The position numbers and the translations under genes were made by a program. A model generated the notes under the pieces. The model was not told the DNA's origin. It did not search any database and saw only the letters and a program-made list of their open reading frames with translations. Below, in pieces: positions 52,801-62,532 of a stretch of 64,000 nt of DNA (positions are counted from its first letter, which is position 1; the number at the start of each line of letters is the position of its first letter). Source of the stretch: Bugula neritina (lineage: Eukaryota; Animalia; Bryozoa); contig OZ037770.1 of NCBI GenBank assembly GCA_964035545.1, positions 5,838,729 through 5,902,728 on the forward strand, read 5' to 3'.

Positions 52801-53843
52801 AATTCGTAATTAGTCCATTAGAAGCTATAGCAACAACAAAATTTATTTTATTGCTGCATCAGATTTCTCAGGAAAATTACCATGTTATTGATTTTTACTC
52901 AGTTGCAACTTTTTTGCAATCGTAAAATATACATATACAGTCATATTCAAATTTGTGAGAGCACCCTTGAATAGTTTATTTTTTTCTGAGGGTTGGTATT
53001 GCTCTCAGTATTTATACAGTACAGTAGGAAAATATGCACTTCAATGAAAAGCTAGTCATATGCTTTACAAGAATCTTTCAAAATCTTTAGCATTGATCTT
53101 GAAAGATTCTAGAGCAAACTGCACCTATATTTCTTTCTAAAACTATACTATATATCTTGAATAATTCAAAAATGTGTTTTAACTCAATTAGTAGCCTTGA
53201 GAAACAATATTGAGGTTAATTATTGTATCATAATCTTTGATTGGCCAACCAGTACTACCAATCATAGCTTGACAACGTCTTGGCATACTGACAATCAGGT
53301 TGGAAAGCAATTCCAAAAATACCACTCAAAGTATAATATGGAAAATAAGTTAAATTGCATAAAACATTTTAAAAAGAATTGGCTGCACAAAAATGTATGT
53401 TTAGATCATAATAATTAGCAAGGACCTTAAGGTGAAACATTGAATTAGCCTGATGGCAGGTGTTTAAAGAGAAGGTCATTGAGTGCATTATTCAAAAGTT
53501 AGTCAGACATCTCTCCTTGACCAACATTTCACTAGCTTTCAGTTGAGCAAAGTTCTTAAAGAGTCTACTCAGATTTAACTGGCACCATCCACTATTTCAG
53601 AAAAATTCTGCAAGTTTTGCATGATGACATTTCAAGATGTTATTCAACCTGACGACCTTCACTCTTTAAAGGAGATAGGAATCCAGGCTCTTTAACACTT
53701 TGAATAAGTTAAAAACACATATTTGAACTAATCTATTGACTTTCTATACAATTTATTATACAAGAACATTAAAAAAATGCAAGTGAATGTTGTCATTTTA
53801 GCTGCTTTAGACATGCCCGGACTTGCCCGCTAGCGCAGCTTGG

Positions 53844-53864
53844 TGACGTGGGGCGGCTGATAGA
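53844..53864 (+). promoter_or_regulatory. Subterminal TGACGTG-GGCGGCTGA motif (left), upstream of KolX
   Basis: TGACGTGGGGCGGCTGATAGA, 19/21 identical to the reverse complement of 61863-61883. Confidence 0.55.
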
Positions 53865-54151
53865 GCTCTTTTGTAGCGCGAGTTTATCTCGCATAAAGTT
53901 GAAAATAGCGGGGTAATGGAAATTTTGCGTCGTTCATAGTTCAACTCTCAGAAATGTTCTTCTTCGGGTGGCTACTAATAACCAACGTTAGCTAACAAGC
54001 AGTAAGAACCAGAACTAATTTGCCTCTTTGTACATTGAAATAAGTTATTCCACTTCGTTGGTTTTTAACCTGCTGCAATTGAAAGAACAAAATATTATTA
54101 GTTGTTTAGTATAGATCTTATTCTTTGTGTGATTTAAAAATTTAAACTGTC

Positions 54152-55578
54152 ATGTTGAGCACACCATCAAAAACCGACTCTCTTAAATATGCAGCAAATG
54201 ATATAGTTCAACCGTTTCGTTTTGAACCAGAAGTTAAACTTAATAGTTGTCACACTCTGACTCATAGTCATACTGATAGTGATACTGATAGTGCATCCAA
54301 GTTCCAAAATCCGTCGGACACCAACTCCAATCACAATGAGATTGATTATCAGTACATCTATGACGATACTGATAGTCATAGTGATACTGATAGTCACAGT
54401 CAGTTTGAGGGCCATGATGATCAAGATAGTTCTTCTTTTTCGGTAAGCTGGACTTTTAAACCCTACTCATTTGACATTTCCCATTACTGTTAGTGTTGGT
54501 GAGGATAAACTAACTTTTTTTATTAGTATTACTATTAGTATTTGATGATAAACTATGTTTTACAGCAATTTTTAATTTGATATTCTATTACCATTAGTAA
54601 GAGTATTCCAATGACTATTACTATTAGTATTACTATTAGTATTACAGTATTAGACTTAGAGCTACAGTTAATGTTACTCTATTAGCGTCAATTTCAACTT
54701 GAATTAAATTTAATTATACTATTAGTATAACTATATCAATATGTATTACTATTTCCGATTTGCATTAGACTTACTAATACCAATAGTAATAATGTTAGTA
54801 ATAATATTACGGATTACTAAAGAATGTTACTTTAAAATATGTGGTTCAACTTTTTAAAATTAAACTAGCAAAATTAATTAAGTTGAAAACAAAGGATATC
54901 TTGCAATGAATTGCTTTTTACTTAGCTCACTGAGTGTGTTATTTTTTAGACCATTCCATCAGCAGAAGAATGGTGTAAGTGTAACAAATGTCAGGTTCAG
55001 CAAACTAAGGAGCAGTCAGTATGCTGCCATAGCTGTAAAGAGGCATTTACAAAGCTGGATTTTAATAAAGGTGTAAAATGTATAACGGATCATCCTGGTG
55101 TATTCGAACTGACACGGCCTACAGTTCTTGAAGTAACATACAACAGCTATTTACGTTATCACGGTTAGCTTAAATTTTATTTGGCATATCAATATTTAAT
55201 ACATAGTTGGATCTTTGCTGTAACTTTACACAAAGAGCGTAAAGATAACAAAAACAATATAGTAATATTTTTTGAGTATAATTACCAAGATAAGTAATTG
55301 TTCTTATACATCCACAGTAAAATTTTATCAATACAACAATTATTGTTTTAGATGATGCATTCGATAACACAAGACACTCCATAAATTCTAAAAGACGGTT
55401 TTGCAGTTATAGAGCACTAGTTTTCTGGCTGTTTCCAAACCTTCGTAAAAGGCAAAGAAAGCCACTGCCAGCTTGCCTGTATGACTGGGTGCAAGCATCT
55501 TTTCCACCTACAGATGATGAAGAACAATTTGGTGATTGGGAATTTTCTAAGTTTGTTTACAATGAAGAAAGAGTATAA
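54152..55578 (+). CDS. KolX / P2X7 C-terminal 'ballast' (nanor-like) Cys-rich protein, 3 exons (54152-54442, 54950-55163, 55352-55578), ~243 aa
   Basis: QPFRFEPE, WCKCNKC...EQSVCC...CITDHPGV, RRFCSYRALVFWLF, RKPLPACLYDWVQASFP. Phase-compatible GT-AG introns and no internal stop. Confidence 0.88.
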
Positions 55579-56031
55579 GCCATAACTATTTTAAATTTGG
55601 AAAATCCTATATGAAAAAGTTCTCAAGTTTTGTTGTAATCAAGAATAATTTTGGTTTCAATAAAACAGTTGAATAGACAAACTTTTTTAAGCATTTTAAT
55701 ATTTTTATATTTACTACCTAAACAATTATTTAACTAATACTTGTAAACACAAAATAATGCTTCAGATGCGCAATAAACTGACCATAAAAGTTAGAATGAG
55801 TTGGAGGTGTAGAACAAATGACGGTCACCGTTTTTCTGTGCTGTTGGAACTTTTTACTCCAGAACACTATATTGAACAAGCATATGTAAATATATGACAA
55901 TTCACGAGTAATAATAATGTGAAATTAATTGATAAATCTAATATTTACTATTTGCGTAATGCTTTATCTTATTTTTGTGACGTTATAACCTATATGTCTG
56001 TGTAGTAGATACATGATTTCGTACCAGTCTT

Positions 56032-59000
56032 CTATCTGAGTAAAACAATAGTTTGCGCTACCAAAATATTTTGCAAAATTAAAAGAAAAAACTTTCTACT
56101 GGGTAGAACACTTGCCATTTCTTTCCTCATAATGCCTCTACTGCAAACTTTGGATGTCTCTATTACAACAGCTTTATCTATTTGTGGTCCTGTTGACGCT
56201 AATGTAGGAATATTTATGGCCGGAAGTTGAGGGCGAGCTGCATTGTGTAGATAGTTTTCTAATCTTAGCATTAAATCATCAACATGTCCTAAAACAATGA
56301 ATATTTTGTGAACAAAATGTTTGAGTTAGTTGTATTTAAGCAAATTTTGCTAAGTTTTCTTACTGTATGTTGGTGGCACTCGTAACTTCGTAGCTACAGG
56401 TTGTAATTTGGAGTGTTTAGACCGGCTAATGGAATACATGGCTTCTCCTGCCTTAGAAACTCTATATGGCCTATTCACATTTTCATTGTGATACATCACA
56501 GCTAATTGGTACCTAAAGTTTAAAAATAACGGTTTCAACAATTTCAGAATGTGCAAATCAAACAATCATTGAACTTTCAAAAGTTTAAGACATAGCCTTT
56601 TTTACCTGGAAGACATTCCTTGATATGTGTATCCAGTCATTTTTGGAGCATAGTGGTTTATTTTAGCATGAAATGCTTCGAGCTCACTTGTATTCTGTTT
56701 TCCTGCTCTTTTTATATCCTTAATGAGTCTAGAGCTGAGCAGTATTTCTCTTAATATGATCTCACATGGACTACCTGATCGAGATAAAAAAGAGCAATTT
56801 CATGGAAGTTTTAGACTGCTTATGCTATAAACTACAGGCACTTAAAATAAGCCAAACAGGCAATGCGATACTTGAAGCTAGCACCTTGTACAATCCAAGC
56901 TTTAGTAGATGGTTTCGTTTCGTGTTGGCATTTGGTATGATCATTTGTTATATGGCTCAGTAGAAGTCGCCATTTCTCCTCTCGATCACTCTCCTCCTCA
57001 GAAGACCAAACACACCAATATAGATGGTTACAAATGGATTTGATCCATGGAGCAATCGCTCTATATTTCGCTGTTCGAGTTTTCTCTGCCAATCTTTTTT
57101 TTAATCCTATGATTCAGAATACATTATCAAACAATTATTATAACCATAGTTTTGCTTTCCATACCATGATGTGAATAACAGTGATCAATATTGATAATCT
57201 GGTGCACCTTTGCTAATATGCCATGTATCAAAGTAGTGCTTTACTTCTGGCCATTGCTGTCGAACATATTTGGTTACGCCTGTGTGTCTATCAGTTGTTA
57301 AAGAAGACACCTTTATCTGATTTAGAGCCAACTCTTCCCTACAGCGTTTGAGACCTTCCAACTCCATGGCATTTGAGCTGCTCACTTCTGTGCTCTTCAA
57401 AATATGCAAGTTAAATTAAAATATCTATACACATAAAATAGCAAAGGAAATTGCAATATACATTGGCCTAACCTTGACTAGTTTTGATGAAATTATACGG
57501 TGATTTTTTAGTTCCATCAAAGTTGTTATGCCATAAAGTGCACTGTGTCCTGGAGAATCACATCTTCCATCACCAGCAATATCTACTTTCCCTTCCAGCA
57601 AAACTTCTCTAAAAAGCTCTTTCTGCTTTAGCTCGTATTCTTCTTTCACAACCTTTTAGTTTATAATACCATTTAATACATAGTTTCAAACATTGATATT
57701 ACCAGTTTAGTTATACCTTTGTAGAAAAAACCATGCCAGCTGACTGGTACAGTCACCTACTTACTATGCTATTGCTAATATTTTAGGTAACGTAATCATC
57801 CATCTTGTAAAATACTAACATACCCCATGCAGATACTTTCTTTGATGTGCGGTAAATGTTCTGTAAGTTGGAACTGCAATGTTGATGCTGGAAAGCATTC
57901 TTAAACACTTGGTAGCATTACCACCAGCAAACAAAATTGCAGCTGAAATGAAGTTGTTGATAGAATAATTCCGCCTAATTTTTGGAGCTGAAGCCCACAC
58001 CAACTCATGACCACATGTCAAACATACAACTTGAAATTCAACATGTGCTCCTTCCCTTTTGTGTGTGCTGTATGTGGTTTCCTCTCCGCAACATGTACAA
58101 GATCTCAACAACATGTGCAAACTGCTCATTGAAACAATTATCTTTTTTTCCTTATATACGTTGTCAAACGACCTATAAGTTTTAAAAATAAATTAAACAG
58201 TTGAAATAACATGTAATATTTTTCAATAGAAAAGGCACACTTCAATTTTGCAATATAATGCTAATGTGGAATTAGTTTTACACACTACAGGCCAGCAAGA
58301 ATAAGTTTGTTCATTGTAAGTGATTATCATGCAACCTTCTGCAACCCCTTGAATCAATTTCGGTACCAGCAACTCGTCACTTGTTTTGATACAACCCTAT
58401 ACAGGCATTTCATCACATTGGTTATGTTTTCTCAGTAAATTTTGAAATTATAAGTTCTGATTTGATCACCTTGTATGGACTTTCCAAAGCGCTTAGTATA
58501 TTAGCACTAGTAGGATTTGCACCTACAATACTTGGTTGCATCAAAGCAGAGTGATTGATCTTGAGTTTGACAGCAAGAAATTTGAGAAAGCATAACCAAC
58601 ACAAAGCAACTTGGTCAAATATGATAGATAGTAGACCATTGAACTAATAAAGTTGAATTAGAAAACTCTCTGCCTGCAACATGCAAAAACATTCCCTAGT
58701 AGTATGTTAATACGCAAGTCACCACTGTTAATTTTATAAAAAAAAATATCGATAGGTCTGGTCAAGGGTAGTTTAGCCATTCATGCAGTTTCAGTAAAGA
58801 ACATTACATTTCCATAAGATTATCATCATCAAAATCCATTTTAAACTCCTCCAAATCTATTTCATCTGGGATGTAATCCTCATCTTTGAGGTCTTCACTT
58901 TCTTCGAAATCATCTTCTACAAACTAGTGAATCAACTGCAGCATGTGAGACTACCTTCAATGTAACAACTAAAGGAAATACAATGTCAACACATAAACTA

Positions 59001-61479
59001 ACATTAAATTGAAAATGATATTCCACAGCCTTCAATACACTCCTCATTTTGAAACTGATATTACCTCCATAGAACCAGATGGCAAATTTACTATCTCTTC
59101 ATCTTGCCAACGCTCATGTTCAACAGTTGCAATATCTACATTCTCAGTTTGGCAAGATATATCTCTTCTTTTAGGCCTCACCATATATATTTCTGTCGAT
59201 GTACCTGTAATATTACAAACATCCTTAACAATAAACAATGACATTAAATCATTTTAAAAAGGTAATTGCATATAATTTTAGTTAACAAAATTGAGTTCTC
59301 ACTTTTACAATGTTGATCTGCACGATAACGAAGAGATGTCACAGAGGATTTTCTTCTTTTTTTTGCTTTAAGAAACTTTTCTCTCTGTTCTTTATGACTT
59401 TCAAGAACATTATCAACTTCTGCTTGACTATTGAAATAGGAGATAAGAAATACAGTCTGCAATTGACAGAATATATCGAAAAAAGATTATCAAGTTCAGC
59501 CATGTACCTGTAAAAACGCACCAGATAACTCAGAACCCAATCAGCAATATCAACCATTGTATAAGGATACAGAAATAAATTTTTACTGAGATGAATGAGC
59601 CTTTTCTGCATCATGAACAAGTAACCGTCTCTCCCGAGTCTCTAGTGGACGTTTTGATTTCTTTCTAGGTGTTTGTGCATCATCAGCTTCCTGCTGTGAT
59701 CGAAATCTTATGGAAGGAACGGCAACGTCAGTATCTAGTCGTAATCTATTCAGTGCATAATACACATTGTACAAGTTCATTTAAAAAACGTAGGAACAAT
59801 TTTTAATAAGAAATGACAAAATAAAAAGAATCAATTTTCTATCAGACTGTGCATCAATTATGCTATGGAGTAAATACTGCCAAAGGTTATAAAGTCTACC
59901 AGTCACATTTATGGAGCTGTCGAAGAATAAATAATTTTTACAGGCAATAAAAACAATTAGTAACATAATGTAAAACTAGTAAAATTGAATCATACAAGTC
60001 ATAGATACTTTTGGTATAATTACAAAGAATAGTCAGTTGTATGAATTTAACATCAACTTTGAATTATAATTAACTGACAATATATATTGTAATACAATTA
60101 CACTTTACTTTAGCTGTTTGAAGTGCATTTAGTGCCATATTTATATTAGTAGCAGTGACTTGAATCATTACCAATAAATCTTTATAAATGATAAGTTAGG
60201 ATGTCTAATAATGTTCAACACTCCACTAACCTAGCATTATAGTTATTTTGACAAATCATAACCATGATTAGTTAGTATTTTGGTTCAATCTATTAACTGT
60301 GGCAGGTGCAGTTGTAATAAATCCAAATTTTAATGAACAGAAGTAATGAGTATAGCAGTCCATATCCAATTACAATTAATGTTTATAGTCTTATAGCCAT
60401 AGTTACTAAGAATTGCTGAATTGTAAAACTCATACCGATACCATGATGACAATCTCATCGAGATCAGTGTTATATATATTTTTCATATTGATAACGGTAT
60501 TTATGAATAATAGACCTCATAATTACAATGAAAATCAGTGTTGTTTGCCAAATTCATATTTTTGATCTAATTTATTAATATAATAATAACTTCAACTTAA
60601 AGTTAAAGTAATTAGGCAATATAGTAAATAACAATAAATGATTGCTAAGCCTAATGCATGACATTGACTAATAATAAATTATATATTAGTATGTTATTTT
60701 AATTATTGAAATATTTTTATTTTTAATAATAATGATTGCATCCAATTTATTTACCATAAACTTACCATCTTGATTATTATAATATTATTATTAATGGTGA
60801 TCTCATTAAATTCAAGGCAAATACTAATAGTAATAATAATATTAATAGTCATATCAATAGGCAATATGGTTACCATTACTATTACTATCACAGTGATACT
60901 ATTAGCATCAGTATCAAAATAAAATTTAATGTAATCATTATGATTAGCCATTGAGATTATTCGATAGATATATTATTATTATCAAAAATAAATTTAACAA
61001 AATTAACTATAATAGTTATTACGTATTATTATCAGTAATAAATGAAAATATAAATAATTTCAAAATATTATTATTAGTTACTTATAGTTAATAAGATATA
61101 GCTTAAGCTATACTTAATCTTATAGTTATAGTTGTAATTGTAAAACTAAATCACTAAATTTAAGTTATACTTATAGTTATAATAAATAATATTTATACTT
61201 TATTAACAGCACTAAAGTCAAAGTGTATTTTAATTATACAATTACTTTAACTTACATTTGATCCTGTTCCGTAACATAGCGATATAAATTCAAAAAATAA
61301 TTTTCTTCAAAATGCTTGCAACATATTCTACTATTAGAATTCAACTTGAAATTCGCAACATCTGTTGCAACCCAAGTGGACCATGCCTTGTGTAAATGTG
61401 GCTTTTTTTCTTTGTCAGGCCATTTAAAAAGCTTGTTTGTGCTGTCACAATATGCGGCAGCACATATTCTTCCAGACAT
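56032..61479 (-). CDS. Kolobok-type transposase with N-terminal THAP domain, 12 exons, ~756 aa
   Basis: Exons 61479-61256, 59745-59587, 59427-59309, 59204-59065, 58923-58808, 58172-57824, 57652-57473, 57394-57208, 57106-56885, 56774-56606, 56512-56364, 56288-56032; all phases are compatible. THAP: CAAAYC..FKWP..W..ICCKHF..AVPSI. CxxC pair, GDGRCDSPGHSALYG, SNAMELEG, LTTDRH, FDTWH, NHLYWC, TSELEAFHA, YHNEN. The 3' end of the last exon is uncertain. Confidence 0.88.
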
Positions 61480-61862
61480 TGTAATTGTAAAAGTAAATCT
61501 GCGTTTGAAAATTAAACTTGAAGAATTGCAGTTGCAGAAGACTCAGAATTTTTCAATAAAATCATCGTAAAACATTATTTGACCTTGACATCTTCATTCA
61601 AGTGCCTTCCACGCCAAGCCCCCGAACCAATTAGTAAATATTTTGGTTTTTTTGCTTTTGCTTATTTTTTAAGAAAACAGCTTCAAAAAAAATTTAAAAA
61701 AAAGTGAGCTTTTGTCCACATTGAAGAAAATATGTGAGTTAATTATCTAAACTCAAAAAGTTACTAGAGAGGCCTAAAATTATTTTAAAAAATCTTGATT
61801 TTCAGACCGATCTCTATGTATTAGTATAGAAAAATAATGGATAACTCCCGTTCAGGAATTTT

Positions 61863-61883
61863 TCTGTCAGCCGCCGCACGTCA
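61863..61883 (-). promoter_or_regulatory. Subterminal TGACGTG-GGCGGCTGA motif (right), upstream of the transposase
   Basis: TGACGTGCGGCGGCTGACAGA on the minus strand. Confidence 0.55.
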
Positions 61884-62532
61884 TTTTCAGTACTATTAAC
61901 CAACATATTTTAATTAACTTTTTTGGTATATTAGACTGATTGTTTTTTTTTAAAAGTTTTTCAGATGCAACTAACAAAACATGTTCTTTTACTTAACAGT
62001 GATTGATTATTTCAAAATAACATGGATTCCTAGAATGTTTAATGAACACCGACGAGAGGCATCATTGACTGTACATTAACACCCCAGCAGCTAGTAGCAA
62101 GAAGTATTTTTCAGTAATTTAAAAGTATTTTTGAGATTTAAATTTACAATTGATCATATAAAGAAATGGTTTGACAAAAAGCTGTCTCCCAAGAGCATTA
62201 TTTGAAACATTAAGCAACCAAGTTCTGCCACAATTTGGAGACGCTTTGCAACAAGTGATATTGTCTGACTAACGCTGCCAACACATGATAAATGCTACTA
62301 AATACTGTAAAAATTGAAGCAAATGATGCTTTCATTAGCAAAAGACCTGTTTTATGAACAATGGCTTTGCCAACAAGACGGTGAGCTTTGCAACACAGCT
62401 AAGGAGGAAAGGAAAGAATGGAAAACAATGACATTAACTCTCAGATCTCAATCCTAGTGCTGAGTTCTTGTGTAGCATTAGTTACCACATTGCTACCAAG
62501 CAATAGTAAGATGTTTGAGCTGATGCTACAGT

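What the first reader, a model, noticed from the sequence alone, without database searches (positions are those of the whole stretch)
53670..62038. Apparently intact, intron-rich Kolobok transposon pairing a THAP-DDE transposase with a P2X7-ballast-like protein
Seen: TTAA on both sides, matching ends, and two convergent genes whose 12 + 3 exons all join in phase with no stop or frameshift. Every other coding TE in the window is decayed. Known (from recall): Kolobok elements have TTAA TSDs and a tail-to-tail transposase + KolX layout, and the P2X7 C-terminal ballast domain binds Zn and guanine nucleotides. Inference: this is a young or active two-component element, or a domesticated pair under selection. 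The accessory protein could be a Zn/GTP-GDP-sensing regulator of transposition; I know of no established function for KolX.
Basis: partly seen in the sequence, partly recalled or inferred. Interest (0 to 1): 0.8.

Follow-up and report, generated by a model that had tools for sequence, protein, structure and literature searches.

The report
Intact Kolobok transposon with KolX gene
This is a complete, transcribed jumping gene of the known Kolobok "Kol0" type, carrying a transposase and a small zinc-binding helper protein (KolX) related to the tail of the P2X7 receptor; that pairing was already published in 2022, so it is a good specimen and not a new kind of element.

Summary
An 8,369-bp element (53670-62038) is flanked by TTAA on both sides. 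Related families in the same genome begin and end at exactly these bases. It carries two convergent, uninterrupted split genes.

My transposase model has 14 exons, not 12 (816 aa: THAP, DDE, H2CH). KolX has 3 exons (243 aa). RNA-derived contigs show both KolX junctions. For the transposase they show three junctions directly and about six more by length. Four predicted introns (I4-I7) are retained in those contigs.

KolX keeps all seven zinc-coordinating cysteines of the P2X7 ballast domain, but only one of five GDP-contact residues. The KolX/ballast link, and the derivation of the P2X7 tail from KolX, are already published (Kojima & Bao 2022, PMC9587614).

This is the only intact transposase gene of its lineage in the 216-Mb assembly. 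Its three sister copies are decayed (80-90% identity). Non-autonomous relatives with homologous ends are numerous and young: at least 40 copies at 98-100% identity.

Against the closest sister copy, both genes show purifying selection: dN/dS 0.33 for the transposase and 0.08 for KolX.

Most likely reading: a low-copy autonomous "source" element. Domestication is not excluded. It is a new member of a known kind.

The scan had already noted THAP+KolX elements without a DDE core elsewhere in this genome.

The parts
53666..53669 (.). left TTAA target-site duplication
   Evidence: related families are also flanked by TTAA
53670..53693 (+). left terminus (AGGAGA-TAGGAATCCAGG...)
   Evidence: six other loci align from exactly this base
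53844..53860 (+). subterminal 17-nt motif TGACGTGGGGCGGCTGA, repeated inverted (16/17) near the other end; possible shared promoter element or transposase-binding site (inferred)
   Evidence: read; the TGACGTG part is conserved in the 5.26-kb family
54152..54442 (+). KolX exon 1 (97 codons; acidic Asp/Ser-rich, low complexity)
   Evidence: joint 54442|54950 seen in RNA contigs of X8 and X9
54604..54643 (.). intronic repeat, 88% complementary to 60820-60859 in transposase intron 1
   Evidence: I1
54950..55163 (+). KolX exon 2: ballast/ZCD cysteine clusters 1 and 2 (WCKCNKC; VCC...KCITD)
   Evidence: spliced contigs
55352..55578 (+). KolX exon 3 with stop: ballast cluster 3 (LPAC...FP) and the R546-equivalent arginine
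   Evidence: joint 55163|55352 in X8, X9 and X10
56032..56288 (-). transposase exon 14 with stop
   Evidence: an RNA contig piece ends at 56288
56364..56512 (-). transposase exon 13
56606..56774 (-). transposase exon 12 (catalytic E motif NTSELEAFH)
56885..57106 (-). transposase exon 11 (H2CH zinc finger SHITNDHTKCQH)
   Evidence: spliced
57208..57394 (-). transposase exon 10 (second catalytic D in TTDRH; DxxH signature DTWH)
   Evidence: spliced
57473..57652 (-). transposase exon 9 (first catalytic D region, AGDGRCDSPG)
   Evidence: spliced
57824..58172 (-). transposase exon 8 (Cys-rich region and start of the PF20700 core)
58284..58396 (-). transposase exon 7 (predicted; flanking introns not seen spliced)
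   Evidence: retained
58470..58530 (-). transposase exon 6 (predicted; flanking introns not seen spliced)
   Evidence: retained
58808..58923 (-). transposase exon 5 (acidic linker; predicted). Its only indels against two other versions are 6 nt, so in frame
59065..59204 (-). transposase exon 4 (predicted). The acceptor coincides with the end of an RNA contig piece
59303..59427 (-). transposase exon 3 (basic, NLS-like)
59587..59745 (-). transposase exon 2 (AVPSIRF, the C-terminal AVPTIF box of the THAP domain)
   Evidence: the same split is seen in the 4.83-kb family
60820..60859 (.). intronic repeat, partner of 54604-54643
61256..61479 (-). transposase exon 1: THAP C2CH zinc finger
   Evidence: 27.2 bits, cut-off 23.9
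61867..61883 (-). subterminal motif, inverted copy (TGACGTGCGGCGGCTGA on the minus strand)
   Evidence: read
62015..62038 (-). right terminus (reverse complement ACATTC-TAGGAATCCATG...)
62039..62042 (.). right TTAA target-site duplication
   Evidence: the C5 sister copy's alignment also runs through this TTAA

Best explanation
This is a full-length autonomous DNA transposon of the Kolobok superfamily, Kol0 lineage, inserted at a TTAA.

One gene encodes an 816-aa transposase. It has an N-terminal THAP zinc finger (inferred to recognise the element's ends or subterminal sites), a basic/acidic linker, and an RNase-H-type DDE core with the DxxH signature and an H2CH zinc finger. The core is inferred to cut and rejoin the element at TTAA.

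The convergent gene encodes KolX, 243 aa. It has an acidic disordered N-terminus followed by a zinc-coordinating 'ballast' domain, the same module that vertebrate P2X7 captured.

Shown: both genes are transcribed, and KolX is spliced as modelled.

Inferred: this single intact copy is, or recently was, the transposase source for several non-autonomous relatives with homologous ends that amplified recently in this genome. KolX is an element-encoded factor needed for propagation. It more likely acts as a Zn-structured protein-interaction module than as a guanine-nucleotide sensor.
For: Boundaries and TSD:
- TTAA lies on both sides.
- Family-level alignments start and stop exactly at 53670 and 62038.
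- Relatives have the same terminal architecture next to TTAA.

Domains:
- THAP and PF20700 score above their cut-offs, and P2RX7_C hits are colinear on two exons.
- P2X7 is the best PDB hit of KolX exon 3, and the Atlas neighbours carry PF20478.
- By inspection, against the motif lists in PMC6004289 and PMC9587614, the transposase has C2CH, P/W/F, AVPSIRF, D, D, DxxH, H2CH and E.

Intactness: 14 + 3 exons, all GT-AG and in phase.

Expression: spliced KolX contigs appear in 3 runs from 3 studies, and spliced transposase contigs in 2 runs.

Selection:
- dN/dS against the C5 copy is 0.33 for the transposase and 0.08 for KolX.
- Against the ~95.5% version in other samples, every listed non-3n indel lies in a predicted intron or in intergenic DNA.
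- KolX exon 3 shows only a synonymous change and TAA>TAG there, against about 38 substitutions in the next 500 bp.

Sole source:
- Transposase exons E8 and E9 occur at only 4 loci, and the other 3 are broken.
- The 5.26-kb family, with ends 70-80% identical to ours, has at least 40 copies at 98-100%.
- The only other Kolobok family found with an intact transposase has unrelated termini.
Against: - There is no second intact or near-identical copy, and no empty site was found. Both flanks are unique in the assembly. Mobility of this copy itself is therefore unshown.
- The termini of the amplified families are only 70-84% identical to ours, so cross-mobilisation is an assumption. Their true source could be absent from the assembly or lost.
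- In the RNA contigs four predicted introns (I4-I7) are retained. As such, that transcript would give a truncated THAP-only product and not a full transposase.
- The right terminus ends in ...GT, not the canonical YY.
- Single-copy status, purifying selection and presence in every sample examined also fit domestication.
Confidence: 0.6

Rival explanations
1. Domesticated pair. The transposase and KolX at this locus are now host genes kept by host-level selection. The still-recognisable ends and TTAA are leftovers, and the element no longer moves.
For: - It is the only intact copy in the assembly, and its relatives are decayed.
- dN/dS is below 1, very low for KolX.
- A ~95.5%-identical version is present and expressed in all four other runs laid (4 studies). 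Exons differ less than the intergenic spacer, as expected for an old, vertically inherited locus.
- Kolobok transposases are known to be domesticated repeatedly (PMC6004289), and KolX itself was domesticated as the P2X7 tail and Nanor (PMC9587614).
Against: - Both termini and the TSD are intact.
- Non-autonomous families with homologous ends amplified very recently, and no other cognate transposase is present.
- dN/dS below 1 between TE copies also arises from selection on active lineages.
Confidence: 0.2
2. Intact-looking but functionally dead or self-repressed element. The mRNA keeps introns I4-I7, so only a roughly 220-aa THAP-plus-linker protein is made. This could act as a DNA-binding repressor, as the intron-retaining P-element transcript does, or as nothing. 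The downstream DDE frame would be open merely because too little time has passed.
For: - Contigs from two independent RNA runs (X9, X10) share the same structure: I8-I13 removed, 57824-59202 unspliced.
- dN/dS of E2-E7 is higher (0.55) than that of the core (0.24).
- Elements encoding only THAP plus KolX are common in this genome.
Against: - Logan contigs keep one path and drop minor isoforms, so the spliced form is not excluded.
- Indels in E4 and E5 are multiples of 3 in two comparisons, while the neighbouring introns carry 1-2-nt indels.
- The DDE core shows clear purifying selection (dN/dS 0.24) and no lesion, whereas sister copies at similar divergence have 3 frameshifts, 4 stops and a 7.2-kb insertion.
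Confidence: 0.15
3. One reading: KolX is a Zn- and GTP/GDP-sensing regulator that couples transposition to nucleotide state.
For: - All seven Zn-coordinating cysteines of the ballast/ZCD motif are present, along with the conserved Tyr (Y550 equivalent) and FP (read against PMC7016195).
- The R546 equivalent is kept.
Against: - Four of the five GDP-contact residues of rat P2X7 are replaced: H547 by F, R574 by Y, R578 by Q, K583 by P (alignment; residue list).
- Rump et al. report that invertebrate ballast-like proteins usually keep R546 and R578. This KolX lacks R578.
- No binding data exist for any KolX.
Confidence: 0.1

Closest known systems
Kolobok superfamily, Kol0 lineage (type family Kolobok-1_XT; Kapitonov & Jurka 2007; Kojima & Bao 2022, PMC9587614)
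   Same: TTAA target-site duplication. Two genes: a DDE transposase with the C/DxxH signature and a zinc finger before the last E, and a separate KolX protein with the cytoplasmic-ballast fold. An N-terminal THAP domain and an H2CH motif, as listed for Kolobok transposases (PMC6004289). The lineage is known from vertebrates, annelids, cnidarians and sponges.
   Different: - The termini are AG... and ...GT, not strictly RR...YY, and the outer six bases of the two ends do not match each other.
- Both genes are highly split (14 and 3 exons).
- The element is single-copy in its genome, accompanied by several abundant non-autonomous derivatives.
P2X7 receptor C-terminal ballast domain / ZCD proteins such as Nanor (Pfam PF20478; McCarthy et al. 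2019; Rump et al. 2020, PMC7016195)
   Same: The three cysteine clusters (WCxCxxC; CC...GxCIT; LPxC...FP) are present. The segment around R546/Y550 aligns to rat P2X7 residues 539-587.
   Different: - It is a free-standing 243-aa protein with an acidic Asp/Ser-rich N-terminus and no channel part.
- It has an 11-residue insertion with an extra Cys in cluster 2.
- Four of the five GDP-contact residues are not conserved.
Drosophila P element (THAP-containing transposase regulated by intron retention; KP-type THAP-only repressors). This comparison comes from my own knowledge, not from a paper read here.
   Same: An N-terminal THAP DNA-binding domain. Transcripts that retain introns and would encode a truncated THAP-only protein. 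Co-resident internally deleted elements that still encode the THAP part.
   Different: - It belongs to a different superfamily, with an 8-bp TSD and a GTP-dependent transposase.
- Tissue-specific splicing is not shown here.
- P elements have no KolX-like second gene.
piggyBac superfamily
   Same: TTAA-specific target-site duplication. A few piggyBac families reportedly encode a protein resembling the KolX C-terminus (PMC9587614).
   Different: - The transposase here matches THAP plus PF20700 (Mutator-like/Kolobok), not the piggyBac DDE domain.
- The termini are not CCC...GGG.

Membership tests
Kolobok superfamily | 4-bp TTAA target-site duplication | tested here: met
   TTAA at 53666-69 and 62039-42. 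Relatives in the same genome are also flanked by TTAA.
Kolobok superfamily | Termini 5'-RR ... YY-3' (PMC9587614) | tested here: inconclusive
   The left end starts with AG (RR). The right end finishes with GT (reverse complement AC), so it is RY and not RR. The 5.26-kb relative shows the same AC/AG asymmetry. The intronless Kolobok family in this genome has canonical GG...CC.
Kolobok superfamily | DDE transposase with the C/DxxH signature and a zinc finger (H2CH) between that signature and the last E | tested here: met
   PF20700 scores 31.8 bits on exon 8 (cut-off 26.5) and MULE is weak on exon 10. By inspection: AGDGRCD (E9), TTDRH and DTWH (E10), SHITNDHTKCQH (E11), NTSELEAFH (E12). The last motif aligns weakly to the intronless Kolobok transposase. 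The catalytic assignment is by motif only. No full-length profile alignment was possible, because the spliced protein was not searched.
Kolobok superfamily | N-terminal THAP domain (C2CH, P/W/F, AVPTIF box) | tested here: met
   Pfam THAP scores 27.2 bits against a cut-off of 23.9 on exon 1. AVPSIRF lies at the start of exon 2, in phase.
Kol0 lineage | A second gene encoding KolX | tested here: met
   A convergent 3-exon gene, spliced in RNA contigs, homologous to P2RX7_C.
Kol0 lineage | Phylogenetic placement of the DDE core within Kolobok0 | not tested
P2RX7_C / ZCD ballast domain (PF20478) | Seven conserved Zn-coordinating cysteines in three clusters | tested here: met
   WCKCNKC, VCC...KCITD and LPAC in exons 2-3, compared with the consensus in PMC7016195.
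P2RX7_C / ZCD ballast domain (PF20478) | Profile match above Pfam's gathering score | tested here: inconclusive
   Each exon alone is below the 23.5-bit cut-off: 16.3 bits (profile 77-101) and 17.8 bits (profile 137-186). The hits are colinear and sum to 34 bits. The joined protein was not scanned.
P2RX7_C / ZCD ballast domain (PF20478) | Ballast fold (structure) | not testable with these tools
   The domain is split by an intron, and the spliced sequence has no reference, so it was neither folded nor compared.
P2X7-type guanine-nucleotide site | R546, H547, R574, R578, K583 contacts | tested here: not met
   Only the R546 equivalent is conserved in the phmmer alignment to 6u9v.
Domesticated transposase gene | Fixed, syntenic single copy across individuals and species, with loss of mobility | not testable with these tools
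   The genome has no relatives in the collection. The reads tool was limited to one call, and the flanks were not in the laid stretch.

The most novel reading that the evidence does not exclude
This genome may run a three-part Kol0 system. One single-copy autonomous element supplies the DDE transposase to more than 100 young non-autonomous copies. Some of those copies still encode only a THAP protein and KolX. The output of the autonomous element would itself be gated by retention of introns I4-I7, giving a THAP-only product as in P-element regulation. KolX is the most constrained component (dN/dS 0.08) and has a degenerate GDP pocket. It would then be an obligatory Zn-structured cofactor or regulator, not a nucleotide sensor. 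That would give the first tractable setting in which to find out what the ancestor of the P2X7 ballast domain does.
Probability: 0.2. Interest if true: 0.55.

Novelty: new member of a known kind. Interest (0 to 1): 0.3.

Why it matters
KolX is the transposon protein from which the P2X7 ballast domain and Nanor are thought to derive, and its function is unknown. This locus offers a complete, expressed Kol0 element in a small genome. It sits alongside decayed sisters and recently amplified derivatives that keep or lose KolX, which makes a natural comparison set for asking whether KolX is needed for transposition. As a sequence feature, though, it is an ordinary member of a described lineage, and the headline 'pairing' is already in the literature.

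Tried and rejected
Searches that found nothing:
- Paralogous empty site. Both 500-bp flanks are essentially unique in the assembly.
- A second intact cognate transposase. Exons E8 and E9 give only 4 loci, and 3 of them are broken.
- PDB search with KolX exon 2. Only chance-level hits.
- Pfam on exons E2, E9, E11, E12, E13 and KolX exon 1. No hits.

Ideas considered and rejected:
- The intronless 3.8-kb Kolobok family (673-aa PF20700 transposase) as mobiliser of the Kol0 derivatives. This is unlikely, because its termini (GGCTGGACT...) are unrelated.
- An exon-swapping inversion between the inverted intronic repeats (54604-54643 and 60820-60859). THAP exon 1 ends in phase 2 and KolX exon 2 starts in phase 0, so a swapped transcript would be out of frame.

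Steps that failed or were cut short:
- Reading McCarthy et al. 2019 directly. The paper is not held, so I took the residue list from Rump et al. 2020.
- Fetching the 4.6-5.3-kb family whose two ends are 83-84% identical to ours.

Steps left out on purpose:
- Every step that needs the joined (spliced) proteins: full-length Pfam scan, large protein searches, structure prediction and ballast superposition of KolX, and KolX-transposase co-folding.
- The two large protein searches. The family scans had already settled the families.

Full report
**What is at the coordinates**

The window is AT-rich eukaryotic DNA, about 30% G+C. It corresponds to contig C6:5838729-5902728 of a 216-Mb assembly.

The stretch 53670-62038 is flanked by TTAA at 53666-53669 and 62039-62042. 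The two ends share only a 10-bp inverted core (TAGGAATCCA) inside a 31-nt pair that is 71% complementary. That pair alone would not stand out among the 545 inverted pairs in the region.

Homology settles the boundaries:
- Six other loci in the genome align at 82-87% identity starting exactly at 53670.
- About forty loci align up to exactly 62038.
- A related 5,262-bp family has the same terminal architecture directly next to TTAA in all four copies inspected: a six-base variable tip followed by TA(A/G)G..TCCAGG.

**Gene models**

KolX lies on the plus strand and has three exons: 54152-54442, 54950-55163 and 55352-55578. They join in phases 0 and 1 and give 243 codons.

The transposase lies on the minus strand. 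All introns are GT-AG and all junctions are in phase. The model is 2,451 nt, or 816 codons, running from the ATG at 61479 to the stop at 56032-56034.

I checked phases and split codons exon by exon. This is the main limit of the report.

**What the proteins are**

Pfam results on single exons:
- THAP on exon 1: 27.2 bits, cut-off 23.9.
- PF20700 (Mutator-like transposase) on exon 8: 31.8 bits, cut-off 26.5.
- A weak MULE match on exon 10.
- P2RX7_C on KolX exon 2 (16.3 bits, profile 77-101) and exon 3 (17.8 bits, profile 137-186). Each is below the 23.5-bit cut-off alone, but the two are colinear.

Other evidence for KolX:
- The best PDB hit of exon 3 is rat P2X7, residues 539-587 (6u9v, E = 0.012).
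- 24 of the 30 nearest ESM-Atlas clusters of exon 2 carry PF20478.

By inspection against published motif lists, the transposase has:
- the THAP C2CH residues with the conserved P, W and F;
- an AVPSIRF box that lies in exon 2, in phase with exon 1;
- the two catalytic Asp regions;
- a DxxH signature (DTWH);
- an H2CH finger;
- the last-Glu motif.

KolX has all seven Zn-coordinating cysteines of the ballast/ZCD motif and the conserved FP. Only the R546 equivalent of the five GDP-contact residues of rat P2X7 is kept. The others are replaced: H547 by F, R574 by Y, R578 by Q and K583 by P (alignment; residue list).

**What is already known**

Kojima & Bao 2022 (PMC9587614) describe the Kol0 lineage of Kolobok. 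It has a TTAA TSD, a DDE transposase, and a second protein, KolX. They show that KolX has the P2X7 cytoplasmic-ballast fold with seven conserved cysteines. They conclude that the P2X7 tail and Nanor derive from KolX.

The function of KolX remains unknown.

**Expression**

Only assembled contigs were available, not raw reads. Spliced contigs nevertheless show the following:
- KolX junction 54442|54950 appears in runs X8 and X9.
- KolX junction 55163|55352 appears in X8, X9 and X10.
- One 954-nt contig carries all three KolX exons.

For the transposase, a 2,436-nt contig (X10) and two contigs from X9 join E8|E9, E9|E10 and E10|E11 at my predicted sites. Their remaining lengths fit E2(part)-E3-E4 upstream and E11-E12-E13 downstream. 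Another contig breaks at the E14 acceptor.

In both RNA runs, 57824-59202 is one contiguous piece. Predicted introns I4-I7 are therefore retained in the assembled form. Read as such, that transcript would end a few codons after exon 4 and encode only the THAP domain plus linker.

Contigs drop minor isoforms, so the fully spliced form is not excluded. It is also not shown.

**Evidence that exons 4-7 are coding**

- Against the ~95.5% version in other samples, every listed non-3n indel falls in a predicted intron or in the intergenic spacer. The one indel inside an exon (58822, in E5) is 6 nt.
- Against the C5 sister copy, indels in E4 and E5 are 3 and 6 nt, while the neighbouring introns carry 1-2-nt indels.

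**Copies and relatives in the genome**

Only one full-length copy exists. Transposase exons E8 and E9 are found at four loci in total:

| Locus | Identity to ours | State |
|---|---|---|
| This element (C6) | - | intact |
| C5 | 86% nt | lacks the left ~960 bp; 7.2-kb insertion inside E7; frameshifts in E1, E11 and E14; four in-frame stops |
| C2 | 80% nt | exons (16.2%) diverge almost as much as introns (18.0%); many frameshifts |
| C1 | 90% nt | 1.5-kb fragment |

Non-autonomous relatives, by contrast, are abundant.

(i) A 5,262-bp family:
- It has at least 40 copies at 98-100% identity, from 113 first-look candidates.
- Its ends are 80% and 70% identical to our right and left ends.
- Its KolX remnants are frameshifted, and most of the transposase is deleted.
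- Its internal segment is inverted relative to the ends, compared with our element.

(ii) A 4.83-kb family:
- It has at least 20 copies at 95-97% identity.
- It has TTAA TSDs and 145-bp TIRs.
- It keeps an open KolX-like gene (56% aa identity) and a THAP exon, but has no DDE core.
- Earlier notes of this scan describe the same kind of element on other DNA of this genome.

(iii) A 4.6-5.3-kb family:
- It has at least three cleanly paired copies.
- Both ends are 83-84% identical to ours, in our arrangement.
- I could not fetch it.

A separate Kolobok family also exists. It is 3.8 kb, with an intronless 673-aa PF20700 transposase, canonical GG...CC ends and at least nine copies above 99% identity. 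Its termini are unrelated to ours.

**Selection**

Between this element and the C5 copy:

| Region | dN/dS |
|---|---|
| Transposase, all exons | 0.33 |
| THAP exon (E1) | 0.20 |
| E2-E7 | 0.55 |
| E8-E14 | 0.24 |
| KolX exons 2-3 | 0.08 |

Against the ~95.5% version present in all four other runs laid, KolX exon 3 shows one synonymous change and TAA>TAG. About 38 substitutions and five indels follow in the next 500 bp of spacer.

Both genes have therefore been kept by selection, KolX most strongly. This does not tell element-level selection in an active lineage from host-level selection (domestication). For Kolobok in Xenopus the two have been argued not to be exclusive (PMC6004289).

**Reading**

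The identification as a Kol0 Kolobok element is secure. Whether this copy is a working autonomous element is an inference.

For:
- intact ends and TSD;
- intact, expressed and constrained genes;
- it is the only candidate source for young derivative families with homologous ends.

Against:
- no second close copy and no empty site;
- the derivative termini are only 70-84% identical to ours;
- the four retained introns.

I put 0.6 on 'functional low-copy source element', 0.2 on domestication, and 0.15 on a self-limited or dead element producing mainly a THAP-only product.

For KolX, the sequence supports a Zn-structured module with an acidic disordered N-terminus. The guanine-nucleotide-sensor idea is weakened, because four of the five contact residues are lost.

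**Verdict**

This is a new member of a known kind, of moderate-to-low interest. Its main value is as a clean natural system for testing what KolX does.

Noticed in passing
G000:C6:52925-58186 (L013:7926-10000 + L019:1-3187); about 40 or more further copies, e.g. C2:7409551, C1:27771937, C9:7223263: A 5,262-bp non-autonomous Kol0 derivative with at least 40 copies at 98-100% identity (113 candidates) and TTAA TSDs. Its ends are homologous to those of the window element (80% and 70%), but its internal segment is inverted relative to the ends. Its KolX remnant is frameshifted, and the THAP exon and DDE core are missing. The copies are near-identical, so it was mobilised very recently.
   Followed up: partly
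L036:3310-8139 (G000:C1:13118909-13123738); also L037, L038, L039: A 4.83-kb Kol0-type element with TTAA TSDs and ~145-bp TIRs, in at least 20 copies at 95-97% identity. It keeps an open three-exon KolX-like gene (56% aa identity to ours) and a THAP exon plus an AVPTIH exon on the other strand, but has no DDE core. Earlier scan notes (s1-467059, s1-481353, s1-481440) describe similar elements.
   Followed up: partly
G000:C3:30888762-30893377; C1:21102507-21107143; C1:21935139-21940444; C8:3331718-3336268: Paired matches to both ends of the window element (83-84% identity, same arrangement) delimit a 4.6-5.3-kb family. This may be its closest deletion derivative.
   Followed up: no
L031:3395-7202 (G000:C3:2002394-2006201) and 9 or more other loci (C5:8147839, C7:336185, C8:12986738 ...): A separate 3.8-kb Kolobok family with an intronless, open 673-aa PF20700 transposase (about 204 bits), TTAA TSDs and canonical GGCTGGACT...AGTCCTGCC ends. 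Its copies are 99.2-99.9% identical, so it looks currently active.
   Followed up: partly
window 54604-54643 and 60820-60859: A 40-nt inverted repeat (88% complementary) made of ATTACTATTAGT-like units lies in intron 1 of both genes. The inversion breakpoints that distinguish the 5.26-kb family fall in these two regions, which suggests recombination between them.
   Followed up: partly
window 53844-53860 and 61867-61883: A 17-nt G+C-rich motif (TGACGTG-G/C-GGCGGCTGA) occurs in inverted orientation 174 and 155 bp inside the two ends, upstream of each gene. The TGACGTG part is conserved in the 5.26-kb family. It could be a shared promoter (CRE-like) element or a transposase-binding site.
   Followed up: no
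window 54100-60099, as seen in runs X2, X8, X9 and X10: All four other public runs laid (four studies) carry a version of the element that differs from the reference by about 4.5%, sharing the same substitutions. Only run X1 holds the reference version (0.86 of words). The reference individual therefore carries a divergent allele or belongs to a divergent lineage.
   Followed up: partly
G000:C5:13494783-13502012: A 7.2-kb insertion interrupts exon 7 of the C5 sister copy. Its content was not examined.
   Followed up: no
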